Below are positions 18,920 to 25,148 of a stretch of 25,148 nucleotides of DNA, piece after piece. Source of the DNA: Salpingoeca rosetta (taxonomy: Eukaryota; Protista; Choanoflagellata); assembly GCA_033442325.1 (NCBI GenBank), contig JAWQFM010000010.1, positions 788,297 to 813,444 of the forward strand. Direction: 5' to 3'. Positions within the stretch are counted from its first letter, which is position 1; each line of letters opens with the position of its first letter. The translations under genes were made by a program, and so were the position numbers. Below the pieces are notes generated by a model, which was not told the DNA's origin, made no database searches, and worked only from the letters and a program-made list of their open reading frames with translations.

Positions 18920-18925
18920 TTTATT
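18920..18925 (-). terminator. Possible poly(A) signal (AATAAA) for the giant repeat gene
   Basis: TTTATT on the + strand, ~535 nt past the stop, between two convergent genes. Confidence 0.3.
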
Positions 18926-19459
18926 GTACTTTCGTTCTTTCACAACACAAACACACACACACACACACACACAGGCAAGCAGGTGAGCAGACAGTAAAAG
19001 CAGCCGCAAACAGGCAAACAACCACACACACACACACACACTGTTGCCTACTCATGCCCCAAGGACACAGCAACAGCGCGCGTGAGGTCAGAAGGTCAAA
19101 ATGAAAGGAAACGTATTCATCAAGCAGGGGCAATAGCATATCGTGCATACACATGCAAGCGCAGGTGTAACTTCACACCATGTCACCCAGCACCATGCAA
19201 GCATGCACAGTCTATATCCACCCACACACAGTATTGCACACTCGACAAAGGGGACACTTTGCTTCACACCGGTCGGTGGCGCATTAACACAACAGCAACC
19301 GCCATTTGGAGCACCGCTGTTCGCACAACACCCAAAGAAAATCATACACACACACACACACGCACACACACACCACAACATAACACAGTCCAAACCATGA
19401 CGAAAACTTATCACCACGAGCACCATTACAACAACATCAGACAACAACAACATCAGACA

Positions 19460-22400
19460 TCATGAGCAGGCAATGATCTGGTTTCCGGCCAAGTCGCGAA
19501 CCAGCCATTCCGTGTGCACAAGGTAGCAATCGTTCTGGGACGTGCACACATCCAGTCGCTTCAGCTCATTCAAGTCGTTTGTGGTCAGGCGCATCCTCAG
19601 GACAGTGGAAGAAGGCAGCGCAAAACCAGTGCGGTCAACCGTCTCAATCCACGCGTCTCCGCCCAAGGTTTCTCCACCGCGCAAAGTAAACGTCGCCCCT
19701 GCATCCTCCACTGCGCTCTGTAGTGTCATCTCCACGGGCTCCAGGGACGATCCATCAACTGGCTCGTCAAACGAGAGCGTCACAATACCGCCGGCGTCAA
19801 CGTCAATCGTAAACTCAAGCAGCACGGGTGCAACTGTGTCTGTTCGGAAAGCATCTGCTGGCCGCGTGTCATACGTCGCCGCCCCGTTGCCAGCAACGTC
19901 CTGCACAAAGCCAGCTGCTGCAGTGAGCAGCGCCGTCGTGTTTGCAGCAAACGCCGGACTCGTCAGCAGCTTCAGCTCATTTGCATCTGCGTTCAGAATC
20001 ACCAGCGCCAAGGACTTCGTCAGCTCACCTCCCCTCAACTCGACCTCAAAGACAGCGTCGAGACGTACGCCGTCAAGACTGGTGTTGACGGGACCCAGGC
20101 GCAACCCAGCGCTAACAAGCGTGCTGGCGTTCACCACCTCGTCAAATACCAGCTGCAGACTTGCCGCACCAACCACGGCGCCGGTCTCCGGGCTCACGTA
20201 CGTGCGATCCAGTGCCAGTGAATGGGACACAATCTGAGGAGCAATGGTGTCCCTCGCGAACAATGCTGCAGGGCCAACCACGCTCCCCACCGTCGTGGGG
20301 TTTCCGACCGAATCCACAACCGCACTGGCAAGCGCAGTCACCCACGTGGTCGAGGCGCTGCTGGCAATTGGGTGAGCGTACATGAGCGCGTCCACCGTCT
20401 CCTGGCTCAGCTGCACCAAGACTTCGGTGGTGAAGGAGCCAACCACACTGGAAGCGTTGAGCGCGACACACGCGCTCGCTGGTGATGCAGTGCCCGTGCA
20501 GTTATCACCGTGTGTGTTTGCATGCACATACACCTGCCCAAGATCGACCGCCTCCGCCTCAATAGACTCGTCAAATGTCATCACGAGTTGGCGGGTCGTC
20601 AGGTCGATGCTGAACGCTTGAAGCACAGGAGGCGTTGTGTCACCCACAAAGCTCCTTGGTTCCACATACGCGGCTGCAACCACGGCAAGTCCGGCTTGGT
20701 CAGCAATGAATGCGGGGCCAAGGCTGAGCACAACTGTCGATGCGTTCGTGGCGATGCGCGCTTCCTTCATCGCATTCATCACCGCCGTGGGCAGCCTCAG
20801 AGTGACATTGGTCGAGTCCACCGTGCTCAGAACCACGGCTCCAGTGAGCTCGACGCTGGCGCTCGTTGCCGCTCCATTCTCGCGGGCAACCATCGCCTCC
20901 ACCACACTCACACTTGTCACGTTCATAATCTCGCTAAAGGACAGGTGCACAACACCAGTGTCAAATTGCAGGGCCCAAGACACCAGCTCAGGCGCCTGCC
21001 TGTCCGCGACAAAGTTGGTTGCTTGCAGCGCACTCGTCGAGGCGCGAGAGAGACCGCCATTGCCACTCAGGTCCCGGAACACGGAAGCGCCATGGGAAAT
21101 CCATGCCGTGGCGAGTGAGACATACAGCGCCTCCTCCCGCTGCAGTGCAAACTGCACATCCTGCGTGAAGTTCAAGCGCACGACGCGGCGACGCAAGGGG
21201 CCGCTGCCCACCACAAGCTGGGCCGCCAACACAACGTCGAGGCGGGCCGCACCAGCGCTCGGTGCACTTACCAGGGTGAGGGCAAAAGCGCTACCATCAG
21301 GTACCGACACGGGCTCGTCGAACGTCAGCATCAAGCCCGTGTTGAAGTCAACGTCAAAGGCGACCAGCTCGGGCTCAACGGTGTCTGACACGCGTACCTG
21401 CAGCGAAAGTGGGGTGGCTGAGGCCGCGTTGCCATTTGGCTGCAATGCCAGATCCTCAATTGCACCTTGAGCAAGCCGCACGCGCGTGGTGTTGGCTTGC
21501 GTGGAAAGGAGGTCCAGCTTCAGCGCGTTCAGCGTGGTTTGAGACAGCACAACACCGGCCGAGTGCAGCGGAAGTGCCCATCCATCCGCAGCGTCAACAA
21601 GGCGACCGCCGTCCAGGCCAATGGGACTGCTGGCCCAGCTTGCCCCAAGAATCAGCTCGACGTCTGCAATCTGCAGTGTGCTGGCGTTCACAGGTTCATC
21701 GAACACAGCAACCAACACCCCTGCGCTCAAGTCAATCCAGAACTCAACCACAGTGGGCGCGACAACGTCAGGTGTGACAGCCAGTGCCACGGTCTGCGAC
21801 TGGATGGGCACGCCAGATGCATCGGCAACAGCGCTGAACGCCACGGCTAGCGTGTGCCACGCTGCGTGCTCAAACAACATGGCCCGAAGAGCGTTCAGTT
21901 CTGTCACTGGCAGGACCAGCGAGGCAGCGAGGCTGAAGTTGGATGAGCCGGTTTGTACCGTGGCGTTCTCTAGTGAATGCAGAATACCATCACTCGACGC
22001 CATCGTCAGCAGACCAACGGCCAACGAAGGCAAGTACACGGGTTCGGAGAAGCGAAGAGACACACCACCCGTTGACATATTGATGGATGCATCCACCAGC
22101 ACTGGGGCAACCGCATCGGCGATGATGCTCAGGTTGGCAACAGCAGCTTCGTTGGTGTTCCCAAAGCTGTCGTCGACAAATGGCGTAGCCACAAGCACGC
22201 AGTCCGCCACCCCAGCCGTCGTTGTCCCGCAAAGGCCAGGATACAGACCGAGCGTGTCAAACACGTTCTTGCTCAAAGCAACAACCGCAGTGTTGTCCCT
22301 GCTGGTATCTGGCACAACAGCGCAGGAGGCCAGGTTCACTTGGGGCAGGGCAGGCTCTGGGCGTCTGGAGCTCAAGACCAGCGCGGTCGTGTTCAAGGTG

Positions 22401-25148
22401 TCATCCACAACAACATCGTCAAAGGTCAATGACAAAACCCTGGCTGTCATGTTCAACGTTGCACTGATGAGGCGGGGTGGGGTCACATCCACGTCCACAG
22501 TCACCGCCAACGACGCAGGCTGGATGGAGTTGGCCCCGGCGGCGTCAACGACAGCACCAGACCGAACTACAACACTCAGCGACGTCCCAGGGGCAAGAAC
22601 ACCGTCACTCTTCAAGGCAAGGCGGTCATTAAAGGTAAGCTGAAGCGTAATTGCACGTTGGAGGGACGCGTTGACAACAGCACCGTGCCCATCGAGTGGA
22701 ATGGAAGGACTCGTCGCATCGCCACTGCGGGTAAGTTCAAAACCGGTCACGTTCAGCGTGTGCCCGTCAACAACCTCGTTGAAGGAGAGAGTAAGCGTCT
22801 CTTCCGGGTTTGCATCAAGAAGCGCAGACAGCAGCACTGGTGGTGTAACGTCTGGAACGAATAAATCGACAGACAGCGAAGCTGGAAAAAGAGCGTTCGA
22901 ATTGGCATCACGAACAGTTGATGGCAGCGTCACCAGCACCAGTGGCATGTTGCCAGAGTAAAGCAGACGAGCAAGGTCGTCGCGCTCATCGCTGGAGAAG
23001 GTGTACGTTATCGAAGGGGTAAGAGCAAACGACGAAGGGTTGCGCACACCGTGGTTGTTAAACGACGCGTTACGCACACCGTTTTGAAGCAAGAACGATG
23101 TCGCATCAAAGGTCGATGCATTCACGGGCTCTGAGAAGGAGAGGGAGATGAGGCCTGCGCCGTCCATGCTCACGTTGAAGCTGACAAGCTCCGGCCGCAC
23201 AAAGTCGCCGTAGAACGCACCCGCACCGCTATCAGCAGCAACCGCGCGCCCAAGCGGCACCCCAGCTATCCCGTTCCCAAACATGTCCCGCACGCTTCCA
23301 CCATCAACACCCACGCGCGTCGTCGCCGCACTCACACACAGCGCAGCGTCAACCTTCACCGCCTCAAGGTCGCCGTGCCCAAGCTCAACAACAACGCTCG
23401 TCGACGCGTCGCCAGCAACGCCAACAACGCGCGTCCCCGCACGCCCAAGCCGCACAGCGTGCGCACTCGTCCCGTCGCCAGTCAGCACAAGCCCGCTCAC
23501 ATTCACGCTGCTCACCCGAACCGTCTCGCTGAAGCCAAGCCAGAGCTCCTCGCTCGTCAGGTTCAGCCGCACCGCCGTCAGCTCCGGGCGCACAACGTCA
23601 CCCGCATAGGCGCCCACGCCAAGCCCCGCTCCCACGCCAACAGCGCGCACAGCGTTGCCCACAGCTGCCATGTCAACCACAGCCCCGCGCCCAACAGCAA
23701 CATACGACGTGGCTGCGCTCGACACAAGCGGGTACAGCGCCTTGACCCTGTCCAGCTCCTCGCGCCCAAGCGCAATCACAACCACCGTGCTGTCGCCGGC
23801 ACTGACAACGGTGCTCTCGCCCTCGCGCAGGCGGTACGCAATGGCGTCTGCCGCTGTTCCGTCTGCCTTGCTCTGCAGCACCACGTGGCTCACGTTCACG
23901 CTGCTCACCAGGACCGTCTCGTCGAAGCTCAGGGTGAGGGTGCCTGCGGTCATGTTGAGGGCGGCGCTGCGCACCTGTGGCGCCACGCTGTCTGCAACAA
24001 ACGCATCCACCTGTCGAGCCGTCAGCCCGCTCACAAGCGGCACAACGGCCTGCTCATTCATGTCCCATGCCGCCGCTGCGCTCAGCACCACAAACGTTGT
24101 GCTGGCACTGCGCCCAACACCAACCCGCTTCAGCTCGTTTGCGTCGGCCTCCGCAACCTGCACCACCATCTCCGTGCCCGGATCGGCTGTCACAAGCTGC
24201 GACCCGCGCAGCGCAACAGAGGCCCCGTTTCCGTCAAACGCGCTCTGCAGGAAAATTGCGCTCACGTTCACGCTTTCCGGCGCAATGGGCTCGCTAAACA
24301 CAAGCGCAAGCTCGAGCGACGACATGTTCACACGCGCCTGCACGACCCGCGGCGCCGTTACATCGTCAACAAACTGCTCCGCCCGCAGCACGCCAGACAC
24401 GGCGTTGTCGTTGCCAGCAGCATCTTGCACTGCTCCAGCCACAAGCTGCACGAAAGTGGTGTTGACGGCTGTGGCGAGCACTCGATCAGCCTTGATGGCG
24501 TGCGCCAGGCTCACCTCAAGCCCAACAACCACCCGCTTGCTCGTGCCGTTGCTCACGACGGTCGTCTCGGCAAGCAGCTTCTCGCTCACGCCAGCGCCGC
24601 CAAGCACGCCCGCGCTTGCAAGTACGCCGCGACTGCCATTCCACGTGCCCGACCGCACAGGCTCGTCAAACACCAGATACACCTCTGCGTCATCAAGGTC
24701 AAGGCCAAACCGCATCAGCCGTGGCGCAGTCACATCTGCGCGCACCTCTGCTGCCGCTTGCCGCGTCTCACTGACCCCGTTGCCAAACGTGTCGAGCACA
24801 GCCCCACTTGCGAGCCCAATAAACGTGTTGCTGGTGCTGGTCGCCACATCGTCAGATGCCTTGAGCGCATCCACTGTCGCCTTGTCCACAGAAATAACCA
24901 CCATCTGCGTTGGCAGGGCGCTCTGAACCACCGTGCTCGCAGCGAGCTCGCCCACAGCAACACCGGCGCCAGGCACCACAGGCCCGACCGCTGCTGCAGA
25001 GGTGCTGCTCACACGCACCCGATCCAGTCGCACACTACCCGTCAGCACAGGCTCATCAAACTCGAGGGTCACCGTGGACGTGTTCATATCCAGCGTGAAT
25101 CGCTCCTGGGATGGCGCAGCGCTATCTGCCGTAAACACAGCACACCCA
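19460..25148 (-). CDS. Giant protein of tandem bacterial-Ig-like repeats (3' part; 5' end outside the window)
   Basis: The frame is open from the window edge to TGA at 19462-19460 (more than 1890 aa) with no introns or microsatellites. It has 15 units of ~125 aa, each starting D-x-x-x-P-x-(L/V)...(L/M)-x-F-(D/S)-E-(P/T)-V and ending near D-x-x-G-N, plus many N-x-S/T sequons. Confidence 0.9.
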   Translation of the reverse strand, partial: GCAVFTADSAAPSQERFTLDMNTSTVTLEFDEPVLTGSVRLDRVRVSSTSAAAVGPVVPGAGVAVGELAASTVVQSALPTQMVVISVDKATVDALKASDDVATSTSNTFIGLASGAVLDTFGNGVSETRQAAAEVRADVTAPRLMRFGLDLDDAEVYLVFDEPVRSGTWNGSRGVLASAGVLGGAGVSEKLLAETTVVSNGTSKRVVVGLEVSLAHAIKADRVLATAVNTTFVQLVAGAVQDAAGNDNAVSGVLRAEQFVDDVTAPRVVQARVNMSSLELALVFSEPIAPESVNVSAIFLQSAFDGNGASVALRGSQLVTADPGTEMVVQVAEADANELKRVGVGRSASTTFVVLSAAAAWDMNEQAVVPLVSGLTARQVDAFVADSVAPQVRSAALNMTAGTLTLSFDETVLVSSVNVSHVVLQSKADGTAADAIAYRLREGESTVVSAGDSTVVVIALGREELDRVKALYPLVSSAATSYVAVGRGAVVDMAAVGNAVRAVGVGAGLGVGAYAGDVVRPELTAVRLNLTSEELWLGFSETVRVSSVNVSGLVLTGDGTSAHAVRLGRAGTRVVGVAGDASTSVVVELGHGDLEAVKVDAALCVSAATTRVGVDGGSVRDMFGNGIAGVPLGRAVAADSGAGAFYGDFVRPELVSFNVSMDGAGLISLSFSEPVNASTFDATSFLLQNGVRNASFNNHGVRNPSSFALTPSITYTFSSDERDDLARLLYSGNMPLVLVTLPSTVRDANSNALFPASLSVDLFVPDVTPPVLLSALLDANPEETLTLSFNEVVDGHTLNVTGFELTRSGDATSPSIPLDGHGAVVNASLQRAITLQLTFNDRLALKSDGVLAPGTSLSVVVRSGAVVDAAGANSIQPASLAVTVDVDVTPPRLISATLNMTARVLSLTFDDVVVDDTLNTTALVLSSRRPEPALPQVNLASCAVVPDTSRDNTAVVALSKNVFDTLGLYPGLCGTTTAGVADCVLVATPFVDDSFGNTNEAAVANLSIIADAVAPVLVDASINMSTGGVSLRFSEPVYLPSLAVGLLTMASSDGILHSLENATVQTGSSNFSLAASLVLPVTELNALRAMLFEHAAWHTLAVAFSAVADASGVPIQSQTVALAVTPDVVAPTVVEFWIDLSAGVLVAVFDEPVNASTLQIADVELILGASWASSPIGLDGGRLVDAADGWALPLHSAGVVLSQTTLNALKLDLLSTQANTTRVRLAQGAIEDLALQPNGNAASATPLSLQVRVSDTVEPELVAFDVDFNTGLMLTFDEPVSVPDGSAFALTLVSAPSAGAARLDVVLAAQLVVGSGPLRRRVVRLNFTQDVQFALQREEALYVSLATAWISHGASVFRDLSGNGGLSRASTSALQATNFVADRQAPELVSWALQFDTGVVHLSFSEIMNVTSVSVVEAMVARENGAATSASVELTGAVVLSTVDSTNVTLRLPTAVMNAMKEARIATNASTVVLSLGPAFIADQAGLAVVAAAYVEPRSFVGDTTPPVLQAFSIDLTTRQLVMTFDESIEAEAVDLGQVYVHANTHGDNCTGTASPASACVALNASSVVGSFTTEVLVQLSQETVDALMYAHPIASSASTTWVTALASAVVDSVGNPTTVGSVVGPAALFARDTIAPQIVSHSLALDRTYVSPETGAVVGAASLQLVFDEVVNASTLVSAGLRLGPVNTSLDGVRLDAVFEVELRGGELTKSLALVILNADANELKLLTSPAFAANTTALLTAAAGFVQDVAGNGAATYDTRPADAFRTDTVAPVLLEFTIDVDAGGIVTLSFDEPVDGSSLEPVEMTLQSAVEDAGATFTLRGGETLGGDAWIETVDRTGFALPSSTVLRMRLTTNDLNELKRLDVCTSQNDCYLVHTEWLVRDLAGNQIIACS

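What the first reader, a model, noticed from the sequence alone, without database searches (positions are those of the whole stretch)
19460..25148. Giant intronless array of bacterial-adhesin-like Ig repeats: candidate undescribed extracellular filament or adhesin system
Seen: at least 15 divergent ~125-aa units, for example ADVTAPRLMRFGLDLDDAEVYLVFDEPV…VQDAAGN and GDTTPPVLQAFSIDLTTRQLVMTFDESI…VVDSVGN. Each has an internal helix-like segment (DALKA, NELKR, NALKL, NAMKE). There are abundant N-glycosylation sequons at equivalent positions (NMS, NMT, NLT, NVS, NAS) and occasional loop Cys pairs (LCG…DC, CTSQNDC). The protein ends right after the last repeat (…GNQIIACS) with no TM helix. This 5.7-kb stretch has no intron, while neighbouring genes have one every 50-400 coding bases. 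Established: D-T-T-(A/P)-P linkers with D-x-A-G-N are the signature of Ca2+-stiffened bacterial Ig-like (Big) repeats in giant bacterial adhesins. Inference: a long, rod-like, glycosylated secreted protein (or one anchored at its N-terminus) of possibly bacterial ancestry, with a role in substrate attachment, extracellular matrix, colony formation or prey capture.
Basis: partly seen in the sequence, partly recalled or inferred. Interest (0 to 1): 0.75.

Follow-up and report, generated by a model that had tools for sequence, protein, structure and literature searches.

The report
Giant secreted Ig-repeat protein, choanoflagellate
The flagged stretch is the last 15 of about 65-76 head-to-tail Ig-like repeats of a roughly 10,000-residue, apparently secreted and heavily glycosylated rod protein of the choanoflagellate Salpingoeca rosetta. 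It belongs to an unstudied family of giant genes shared with other choanoflagellates, sponges and golden-brown algae.

Summary
Window 19460-25148, minus strand, is one open frame made of exactly 15 contiguous units of 116-137 aa. It ends at a real stop with no membrane helix.

What I added:
- The frame continues beyond the window, across a 4.3-kb assembly gap, for about 28.5 kb as a single exon.
- Upstream lie five short exons with nine smaller Ig-like domains, and a first exon that reads as a signal peptide.
- AlphaFold2 models two units with pLDDT 93.7 and pTM 0.86. Each unit is a beta-sandwich with one helix. The closest solved structure is an Ig-like domain of the bacterial S-layer protein SbsC (Z about 10).
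- Pfam Big_5 is matched above threshold, but weakly.
- N-glycosylation sequons occur 2.4-2.5 times more often than expected, at fixed positions in the unit.
- The genome is S. rosetta, and it holds at least five further paralogous loci.
- All named relatives are eukaryotic: two other choanoflagellates (transcripts), two sponges and four ochrophyte species. This is therefore neither contamination nor a recent bacterial transfer.

Calcium stiffening and the biological role remain untested. My reading is a secreted structural filament of the cell coat or matrix. First readers of this scan had already flagged upstream parts of the same gene. Interest is moderate.

The parts
19463..25148 (-). 3'-terminal 5.7 kb of the giant terminal exon. 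It encodes 15 contiguous Big_5-like Ig repeat units, and the frame runs off the window's end.
   Evidence: Open frame. 15 HMM domains tile residues 8-1895. Pfam Big_5 scores 43.7 bits against a gathering score of 23.6.
24737..25126 (-). unit 1 (130 aa)
24365..24736 (-). unit 2 (124 aa); first half of the modelled pair
   Evidence: AF2 model
23993..24364 (-). unit 3 (124 aa); second half of the modelled pair
23600..23992 (-). unit 4 (131 aa)
   Evidence: non-seed unit, E 6e-26
23207..23599 (-). unit 5 (131 aa)
   Evidence: non-seed unit, E 1.6e-20
22853..23206 (-). unit 6 (118 aa), the most divergent unit
   Evidence: E 1e-10; 17% identity to the reference unit
22490..22852 (-). unit 7 (121 aa); holds the best single Pfam Big_5 stretch
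22118..22489 (-). unit 8 (124 aa), with the loop Cys pair at residues 973/983
21770..22117 (-). unit 9 (116 aa)
21386..21769 (-). unit 10 (128 aa)
   Evidence: non-seed unit, E 1e-18
21005..21385 (-). unit 11 (127 aa)
   Evidence: non-seed unit, E 1.4e-12
20642..21004 (-). unit 12 (121 aa)
20252..20641 (-). unit 13 (130 aa), with the Cys pair at residues 1550/1560
19841..20251 (-). unit 14 (137 aa), with a 13-residue insertion in the A-B hairpin
19463..19840 (-). unit 15 (126 aa), the C-terminal cap. It has a Cys pair at unit positions 86/92 and a further Cys one residue before the C-terminus.
   Evidence: It best aligns to the C-terminal unit of P0038, with all three Cys conserved.
19460..19462 (-). 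TGA stop codon, the end of the protein
   Evidence: No repeat unit lies downstream.
18920..18925 (-). AATAAA, a candidate polyadenylation signal about 535 nt after the stop, in GT-rich sequence (not verified)
   Evidence: read from the sequence
23109..25148 (-). Part of a recently duplicated module. It is 99.9% identical (2 differences in 2,040 nt) to G000:C10:829102-831141 in the same gene and ends at the assembly gap.

Best explanation
The stretch is the 3' end of one very large Salpingoeca rosetta gene, G000:C10 about 807756-841012 on the minus strand.

Predicted product, from N- to C-terminus:
- a cleavable signal peptide (exon 1);
- nine beta-sandwich domains of about 95 aa, of the macroglobulin/Big_1-like kind (exons 2-6);
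- one terminal exon of about 28.5 kb encoding about 65 detected (about 76 if the gap is sized correctly) head-to-tail SbsA/Big_5-type Ig-like domains of about 125 aa, each with one short helix;
- one carbohydrate-binding-module-like insertion in the middle of that array;
- a Cys-bearing last unit, with no membrane anchor.

Shown by the tools: the repeats, their predicted fold, the sequon enrichment, the lack of a TM segment, the paralogues and the eukaryotic relatives.

Inferred: the protein is secreted, heavily N-glycosylated at fixed loop positions, and forms a stiff rod several hundred nanometres long. The stiffness is inferred from three things. The units abut without linkers. The two-domain model has a confident fixed geometry. 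The near-invariant D1, E25, D103 and N107 should all lie at the domain pole that faces the preceding unit; this follows from strand topology, not from coordinates.

Most likely role: a structural filament of the cell coat, theca or extracellular matrix. The CBM-like insert and the C-terminal Cys would tie it to glycans or to other chains.
For: Repeats and fold:
- Repeat architecture.
- AF2 pLDDT 93.7, pTM 0.86.
- SbsC match, Z 10.1 / 9.5, rmsd 2.6-2.7 over about 100 residues, well above the next Foldseek-derived matches.
- Pfam Big_5 above the gathering score in all three sections of the exon: 43.7, 41.2 and 31.2 bits.

Secretion and glycosylation:
- Sequons: 32 against 12.7 +/- 3.2 in the window ORF, and 144 against 60 +/- 7 in the whole ORF.
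- No TM-like segment.
- Exon 1 has an M...hydrophobic...A-x-A pattern and a canonical CAG|GT donor, and its acceptor is in phase.
- The exon 6 to giant exon junction is GT-AG and in phase.

Selection and family:
- Seven of the eight substitutions between the recent internal duplicates are synonymous.
- The C-terminal cap is conserved in P0038.
- Family members with signal peptides are found as transcripts in Acanthoeca spectabilis and Codosiga hollandica.
- At least six loci and 238 candidate units occur in this genome.
- D1, P5, F23, E25 and D103 are 84-99% conserved across 1,902 units from 96 proteins.
Against: - I had no direct expression, proteomic or localisation data for this gene.
- No public protein model of it appeared among proteins of 1,040-5,457 aa.
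- A 4,282-N gap sits inside the exon, and both its flanks are near-identical copies of upstream parts. Length, unit number and continuity of frame are therefore uncertain.
- The signal peptide and the exon junctions were read by eye. I did not run a predictor or assemble a joined model.
Confidence: 0.7

Rival explanations
1. It is a filament protein of the flagellar vane or the collar glycocalyx mesh. These are fine extracellular filament systems shared by choanoflagellates and sponge choanocytes, and their composition is unknown. This would be a special case of the best explanation.
For: - The family is found in choanoflagellates and sponges.
- S. rosetta vane filaments are about 3.5 nm thick and survive proteinase K. 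Their composition is called unknown and presumed glycoprotein or carbohydrate (PMC9671500). A single glycosylated Ig-domain chain would be about that thick (my estimate).
- Foldseek lists the Chlamydomonas flagellar coat protein FMG1B among the top matches. FMG1B is also built from Ig-like units with one short helix.
Against: - The family also occurs in ochrophyte algae, which have no vane.
- There is no membrane anchor.
- One molecule would be about 0.3-0.4 micrometre long, whereas the vane extends for micrometres.
- There are no localisation data.
- The FMG1B match is a generic tandem-Ig match (TMq 0.32) with no detectable sequence relation.
Confidence: 0.1
2. It is a membrane-anchored adhesin or receptor. 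The anchor would be an uncleaved N-terminal signal anchor, a TM segment hidden in the assembly gap, or a missed 3' exon.
For: - Many giant choanoflagellate surface proteins are membrane-anchored (earlier notes of this scan, not tested by me).
- 1,427 codons are hidden in the gap.
Against: - No TM-like segment in 8,104 sequenced residues.
- Both gap flanks are copies of repeat modules, so the gap most likely holds more repeats.
- The stop is followed by stops in all frames and by an AATAAA.
- The C-terminal cap is conserved as a protein end in P0038.
- At a Kyte-Doolittle cut-off of 2.0-2.2, only a few fragmentary homologue models show a hydrophobic stretch: an N-terminal signal-like one in P0029 and P0033, and short stretches in P0004, P0033 and P0066. 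The rest show none.
Confidence: 0.1
3. It is an assembly artefact or a decaying repeat array, not a functional gene. Collapsed or misjoined near-identical repeats would create an apparent giant ORF.
For: - A gap flanked by 99-99.9% identical copies, and a third 0.95-kb copy elsewhere in the exon.
- Keeping frame across an arbitrary N run is a 1-in-3 coincidence.
Against: - 24.3 kb of sequenced DNA has no stop in frame.
- The units are diverged at 17-36% identity yet keep the fold-defining residues.
- Seven of eight substitutions between the duplicates are synonymous.
- Paralogues have open frames of 9,148 and 4,918 codons.
- Relatives are expressed in other choanoflagellates.
Confidence: 0.05
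4. It is bacterial contamination, or a recent horizontal transfer of a bacterial adhesin gene.
For: - The repeat matches the mostly bacterial Pfam family Big_5, and its best solved structure is a bacterial S-layer domain.
- The exon has no intron.
Against: - It lies on a 1.9-Mb contig.
- Its upstream exons have GT-AG introns full of the genome's CA/GT microsatellites.
- Sequons are enriched.
- There are at least six paralogous loci on four contigs, one of which is the annotated PTSG_12324.
- Every named sequence relative is eukaryotic, at 22-27% identity.
- Only 4 of 15 units reach even E <= 1 against Big_5.
Confidence: 0.02

Closest known systems
SbsA/SbsC-type Ig-like domains of Geobacillus S-layer proteins (Pfam Big_5, PF13205; PDB 2ra1, 4uj6)
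   Same: - Predicted fold: Z 10.1 and 9.5, rmsd 2.6-2.7 over about 100 of 124 residues.
- Motif pattern: D-x-x-x-P at the start, F-[DS]-E-P-V, and D-x-x-G-N.
- Pfam Big_5 scores above its gathering score.
- Tandem arrangement in an extracellular structural protein.
   Different: - This is a eukaryotic, intron-containing gene.
- It has 65-76 units rather than a handful.
- N-glycosylation sequons sit at fixed positions.
- There is no S-layer anchoring domain.
- Single units mostly fall below Pfam significance, and no PDB sequence match was found.
Giant calcium-rigidified BIg-repeat adhesins of Gram-negative bacteria (MpIBP, SiiE, LapA type; from my own knowledge)
   Same: A very long extracellular rod of about 100-aa Ig-like repeats joined head to tail, with conserved acidic residues near the domain junctions.
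   Different: - No RTX or type 1 secretion module, and no matching Pfam family for that repeat type, was found.
- A Ca2+ site was not tested.
- This protein has eukaryotic secretion and glycosylation signals.
Chlamydomonas flagellar membrane glycoprotein FMG1B (PDB 9gos; bioRxiv 10.1101/2024.09.28.615573)
   Same: A giant eukaryotic glycoprotein made of tens of low-identity Ig-like units, each with one short helix. It ranks second in Foldseek.
   Different: - FMG1B is anchored by a transmembrane segment.
- FMG1B has a perfectly conserved Cys pair in every unit. Here only 13-20% of units carry a Cys pair.
- No sequence similarity is detectable.
- The structural match is of the generic tandem-Ig kind (TMq 0.32).
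Unnamed eukaryotic family: S. rosetta PTSG_12324, Dysidea avara XP_065887295.1, Ephydatia muelleri EMCRGX_G018687-018703, Triparma and Chrysophaeum 'TNFR-Cys domain-containing' proteins
   Same: The same repeat unit fills nearly the whole protein: 9-31 units in models of 1,000-3,300 aa at 22-27% identity (6-15 in the two weakest hits), with signal peptides where the N-terminus is complete.
   Different: - The C-terminal modules differ. The sponge proteins and the S. rosetta C1 paralogue end in TIG and Calx-beta-like domains plus a conserved Cys motif.
- The algal proteins end in TNFR-Cys plus a conserved tail.
- This gene ends in a bare Cys cap and starts with nine extra small Ig-like domains.

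Membership tests
Pfam Big_5 (PF13205) / SbsA-type bacterial Ig-like domain | Score at or above the family's gathering score | tested here: met
   The whole-protein scores are 43.7, 41.2 and 31.2 bits for the three sections, against a cut-off of 23.6. The match is weak per unit: only 4 of 15 units reach E <= 1, the best at 8.4e-5.
Pfam Big_5 (PF13205) / SbsA-type bacterial Ig-like domain | Ig-like beta-sandwich fold like the solved S-layer domains | tested here: met
   The AF2 model has pLDDT 93.7. SbsC 2ra1/4uj6 residues 258-358 match at Z 10.1 / 9.5, rmsd 2.6-2.7. This is a predicted structure, not a solved one.
Calcium-rigidified BIg repeats of RTX adhesins | Ca2+ ions coordinated by conserved acidic residues at each inter-domain junction | not testable with these tools
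   D1, D/N13, E25, D103 and N107 are conserved in 1,902 units.
Calcium-rigidified BIg repeats of RTX adhesins | C-terminal RTX repeats or type 1 secretion signal, in a bacterial gene context | tested here: not met
   Pfam finds no RTX-type family. The protein ends in a Cys cap. The gene has spliceosomal introns and a eukaryotic-type signal peptide.
Cadherin repeats | Match to the cadherin domain families | tested here: not met
   No cadherin family appears in the Pfam scan at E <= 1.
FMG1B-type 'beta chunk repeat' flagellar coat proteins | Invariant Cys pair in each unit and a C-terminal membrane anchor | tested here: not met
   A Cys pair at unit positions 86/92 is present in only 13-20% of units. 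There is no TM segment. No sequence match to PDB chains was found.
Choanoflagellate-sponge-ochrophyte giant Big_5-like array family (unnamed; defined here) | A protein made almost wholly of units matching the unit profile, with D1, P5, F23, E25 and D103 conserved, and a secretory N-terminus | tested here: met
   51 and 38 significant relatives at E down to 0. 1,851 homologue units carry the same invariant positions. P0081 is a paralogue in the same genome.

The most novel reading that the evidence does not exclude
This family supplies the so far unidentified thin glycoprotein filaments of the flagellar vane and/or the collar mesh of choanoflagellates and sponge choanocytes. If so, it would be a molecular marker for the disputed homology of the two collar-flagellum systems. 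The ochrophyte members would then serve other flagellar or surface coats.
Probability: 0.08. Interest if true: 0.85.

Novelty: new variant of a known kind. Interest (0 to 1): 0.45.

Why it matters
Choanoflagellates and sponges are the key comparison for how animal cell surfaces and matrices arose. This is a multi-gene family of 4,000-10,000-residue secreted rods shared by both groups, and also by ochrophyte algae. It is built from a domain otherwise known from bacterial S-layers. Databases list its members only as hypothetical proteins, and my five literature searches aimed at it (by Pfam name and accession, organism plus domain or secretome terms, and the paralogue's locus tag) found no paper on it.

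These proteins are among the largest products of this genome, and they are obvious candidates for extracellular structures whose makeup is unknown: the vane, the theca and the rosette matrix. S. rosetta can be transfected and edited, so the question is testable.

It also shows that standard domain scans under-call this repeat: only 4 of 15 units are seen singly. The reference assembly is also unreliable inside such genes.

Tried and rejected
Bacterial genomes were therefore not scanned directly.
The source organisms of the unnamed ENA/JGI relatives stay unknown.
- Sequence searches of the PDB with the whole protein and with one- and two-unit profiles gave nothing meaningful: CopC at E 0.47, one chance hit at E 0.014, and none.
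- NCBIfam gave no hit.
- The ESM Atlas returned only unnamed short clusters at a low recognition value and was uninformative.
- Literature searches returned nothing relevant for Big_5 with choanoflagellate, S. rosetta with bacterial Ig-like, PF13205, PTSG_12324, or S. rosetta secretome/matrix proteomics.
- I did not run the 1.84-billion-protein profile search.
- I did not use the third word search.
- I could not find the public gene model of this locus, because queries are limited to 3,333 aa and so to targets of 5,833 aa or less.
Exons were searched one by one by reference.
- Rejected readings: contamination or recent transfer, cadherin, RTX adhesin, and membership of the FMG1B family. Reasons are given in the rival explanations and the membership table.
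Full report
**Observation.** The finding lies on the minus strand. Window 19463-25148 is one open frame ending in TGA at 19460-19462, and it runs off the window's end. I built an HMM from nine units delimited by the D-x-x-[AP]-P motif. It finds 15 domains that tile residues 8-1895 without linkers. The six units not used as seeds score 1e-10 to 6e-26, so the periodicity is not an artefact of how the seeds were chosen. Units are 116-137 aa long and 17-36% identical to the reference unit. D1, P5, F23 and D105 are invariant and E25 nearly so. Sequons are 2.5-fold enriched: 32 against 12.7 +/- 3.2 in shuffles. They cluster at unit positions 13, 28, 33 and 90.

**The whole gene.** The window is G000:C10:788297-813444 of a 55.4-Mb genome. 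A run of 4,282 N starts directly after the window. Beyond it the same frame stays open to C10:836354, which gives 9,532 codons including 1,428 X. The unit profile finds about 50 more units there. It also finds one insert of about 160 aa that matches Pfam HpiC1-like, a jelly-roll carbohydrate-binding-module-like fold, at 30.7 bits against a cut-off of 27.

The array starts mid-unit. A canonical donor (CCAC|GTAAGC; exon ends at 836653) and acceptor (CTTCAG|GG; exon starts at 836299) join it in phase to an upstream exon. Five upstream exons (C10:836654-840638) hold nine beta-sandwich domains of 92-104 aa. Their Pfam Big_1 hits are sub-threshold. A profile of them hits the E. coli intimin-like FdeC weakly, at E 0.018. 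One of them models at pLDDT 89.9 and resembles the macroglobulin domains of complement C3/C4 at TM 0.75-0.78.

A first exon (C10:840919-841012) begins with ATG. It encodes a short polar start, a 17-residue hydrophobic core and an A-x-A-type end, followed by a CAG|GT donor whose phase fits exon 2. I read these junctions by eye.

Downstream of the stop there are stops in all frames, GT-rich sequence and an AATAAA about 535 nt away. No further unit lies downstream. No 19-residue window in the 8,104 sequenced residues looks like a TM helix: the maximum is 1.74, in segments with a charged residue or prolines.

**Assembly caveat.** Window 23109-25148 is 99.9% identical to C10:829102-831141. The far flank of the gap (817727-818679) is 99.0% identical to 832067-833020. 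A third 0.95-kb copy lies at 821528-822478. The gap therefore sits inside a duplicated module of about 3.9 kb. In the intact copy only 925 bp separate the two matching segments, so the gap size, the unit count (65 seen, about 76 if the gap is right) and the in-frame continuity are all uncertain.

Away from the duplication edges, the copies differ by eight substitutions. Seven are synonymous third-position changes and one changes Q to L. This is a small but clear sign that the frame is under selection.

**Fold.** I aligned 43 two-unit segments of this gene and modelled units 2-3. The result was pLDDT 93.7 and pTM 0.86. Such a high pTM for a two-domain chain argues for a defined inter-domain geometry.

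Foldseek returns generic tandem Ig/FN3 chains, with the Chlamydomonas flagellar coat protein FMG1B at rank 2. Exhaustive VIA alignment puts an Ig-like domain of the S-layer protein SbsC first: 2ra1 and 4uj6, Z 10.1, rmsd 2.6-2.7, about 100 residues. It is followed by Ig-like domains of esterases (Z 8.3-8.6) and by CopC (about 6). Among Foldseek's own candidates SbsC stands alone, at 9.5 against 4.9 for the next.

Pfam Big_5 is matched above its gathering score by each third of the array, but singly by only 4 of 15 units. The repeat is thus a divergent, eukaryotic branch of the SbsA/Big_5 kind of Ig-like domain.

**Relatives.** The genome is S. rosetta. NCBI protein PTSG_12324 is 100% identical over 1,682 residues to a paralogous locus on contig C13. 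The unit profile finds 238 candidate units at six or more loci. These are this gene, C1:1851574-1876935 (a 9,148-codon frame), C16:433450-446511 (4,918 codons) and three loci on C13.

The C1 paralogue has the same small Ig-like domains upstream. It ends in IPT/TIG domains, a Calx-beta-like domain and a Cys motif. This tail recurs in the sponge Dysidea avara (XP_065887295.1) and in several unnamed proteins.

Word searches found 51 and 38 relatives at 22-27% identity, made almost wholly of the same unit. The named ones are all eukaryotic:
- the choanoflagellates Acanthoeca spectabilis and Codosiga hollandica (transcriptome models, the first with a signal peptide);
- the sponges Ephydatia muelleri (a tandem set on one 8.9-Mb contig) and Dysidea avara;
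- the ochrophytes Triparma strigata and T. retinervis, Chrysophaeum taylorii and Ochromonas/Chlorochromonas danica. In the ochrophytes the array is followed by a TNFR-type Cys-rich region and a conserved tail.

Across 1,902 units from 96 proteins, conservation is D1 95-96%, P5 97-98%, F23 84-96%, E25 92-93% and D103 94-99%. N107 is about 75%. An optional Cys pair occupies positions 86/92 in 13-20% of units. The last two units of this protein align best with the last two of P0038, including all three terminal cysteines, and that protein ends 5 residues after the last one. This supports a genuine C-terminus.

**Interpretation.** Contamination and recent bacterial transfer are excluded by four things: the introns, the paralogues on four contigs, the annotated paralogue, and the purely eukaryotic set of named sequence relatives. 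The link to bacteria is a remote, domain-level one.

The gene most likely encodes a secreted, heavily N-glycosylated rod. At roughly 4 nm per Ig-like domain (my estimate), about 85 domains would span 0.3-0.4 micrometre. From strand topology, the conserved acidic/amide set D1, E25, D103, N107 should sit at the pole of each unit that faces the previous unit. However, no coordinates or ion modelling were available, so it remains open; I would put it near 35-40%.

The mid-rod CBM-like insert and the odd C-terminal cysteine suggest attachment to glycans and covalent pairing. Both are inferences.

**Function.** I could not obtain expression or localisation data for this gene. A structural role in the cell coat, theca or matrix is the conservative reading.

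A more exciting but weakly supported possibility is the flagellar vane or collar mesh. The vane's 3.5-nm, proteinase-K-resistant filaments are of unknown composition (PMC9671500). Choanoflagellates and sponges both have a vane and both have this family. But ochrophytes have the family too, the protein has no anchor, and one molecule is too short. I give it under 10%.

**Novelty and score.** This is a divergent eukaryotic variant of a known domain and of a known design, the giant tandem-Ig extracellular rod. It belongs to a family that databases list only as hypothetical proteins, and my searches found no paper on it. First readers of this scan had already flagged upstream parts of the same gene: the internal duplications and the CBM-like insert. 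I confirmed both.

The large representative-protein search was deliberately not run.

Noticed in passing
L005:5787-6344 (-) = G000:C10:822786-823343, outside the window: An insert of about 186 aa within the repeat array matches Pfam HpiC1-like (PF22825) at 30.7 bits against a cut-off of 27. This is a jelly-roll, CBM-like fold and a possible glycan-binding site in the middle of the rod.
   Followed up: partly
window 23109-25148; G000:C10:817727-818679, 821528-822478, 829102-833020: There are recent in-frame internal duplications at 99.0-99.9% identity. Two of them flank the 4,282-N gap, so the gap is probably a collapsed or unresolved copy of a module of about 3.9 kb. Seven of eight interior differences between the copies are synonymous.
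   Followed up: yes
G000:C1:1850008-1876935 (-); L015:7005-9950, L016:1-2451: A paralogue with a 9,148-codon open frame carries the same small Ig-like domains upstream. Its C-terminal tail holds IPT/TIG domains (63 bits), a Calx-beta-like domain and a two-Cys end motif. This tail recurs in the sponge Dysidea avara and in several unnamed proteins.
   Followed up: partly
G000:C16:433450-446511; C13:87296-94812, 330170-343501, 617141-624127: Four more loci carry the same repeat. One of them (C13:330170-343501) is the annotated hypothetical protein PTSG_12324. Several have gaps or split frames.
   Followed up: partly
L014:663-4636 (-) = G000:C10:836663-840636: Nine beta-sandwich domains of 92-104 aa lie in five short exons ahead of the array. 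They are macroglobulin/Big_1-like by predicted fold. A profile of them weakly hits E. coli FdeC (E 0.018) and the Chlamydomonas gamete adhesin FUS1 (E 0.47).
   Followed up: partly
P0018, P0029, P0034, P0035, P0039, P0048 (ochrophyte and unnamed relatives): Algal family members end in a TNFR-type Cys-rich region followed by a conserved tail of about 50 aa containing an R-H-H-W-V motif. No Pfam family covers this tail.
   Followed up: no
unit profile positions 86 and 92 (for example window 19526-19546): An optional Cys pair at fixed positions just after the helix is present in 13-20% of 1,902 units across the family. It probably forms a loop-stapling disulfide.
   Followed up: partly
window 18950-19400 and introns at G000:C10:836300-841000: Long (GT)n/(CA)n microsatellites fill the 3' flank and the introns of this gene. 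They produce spurious 'CVCV/THTH' open frames.
   Followed up: no
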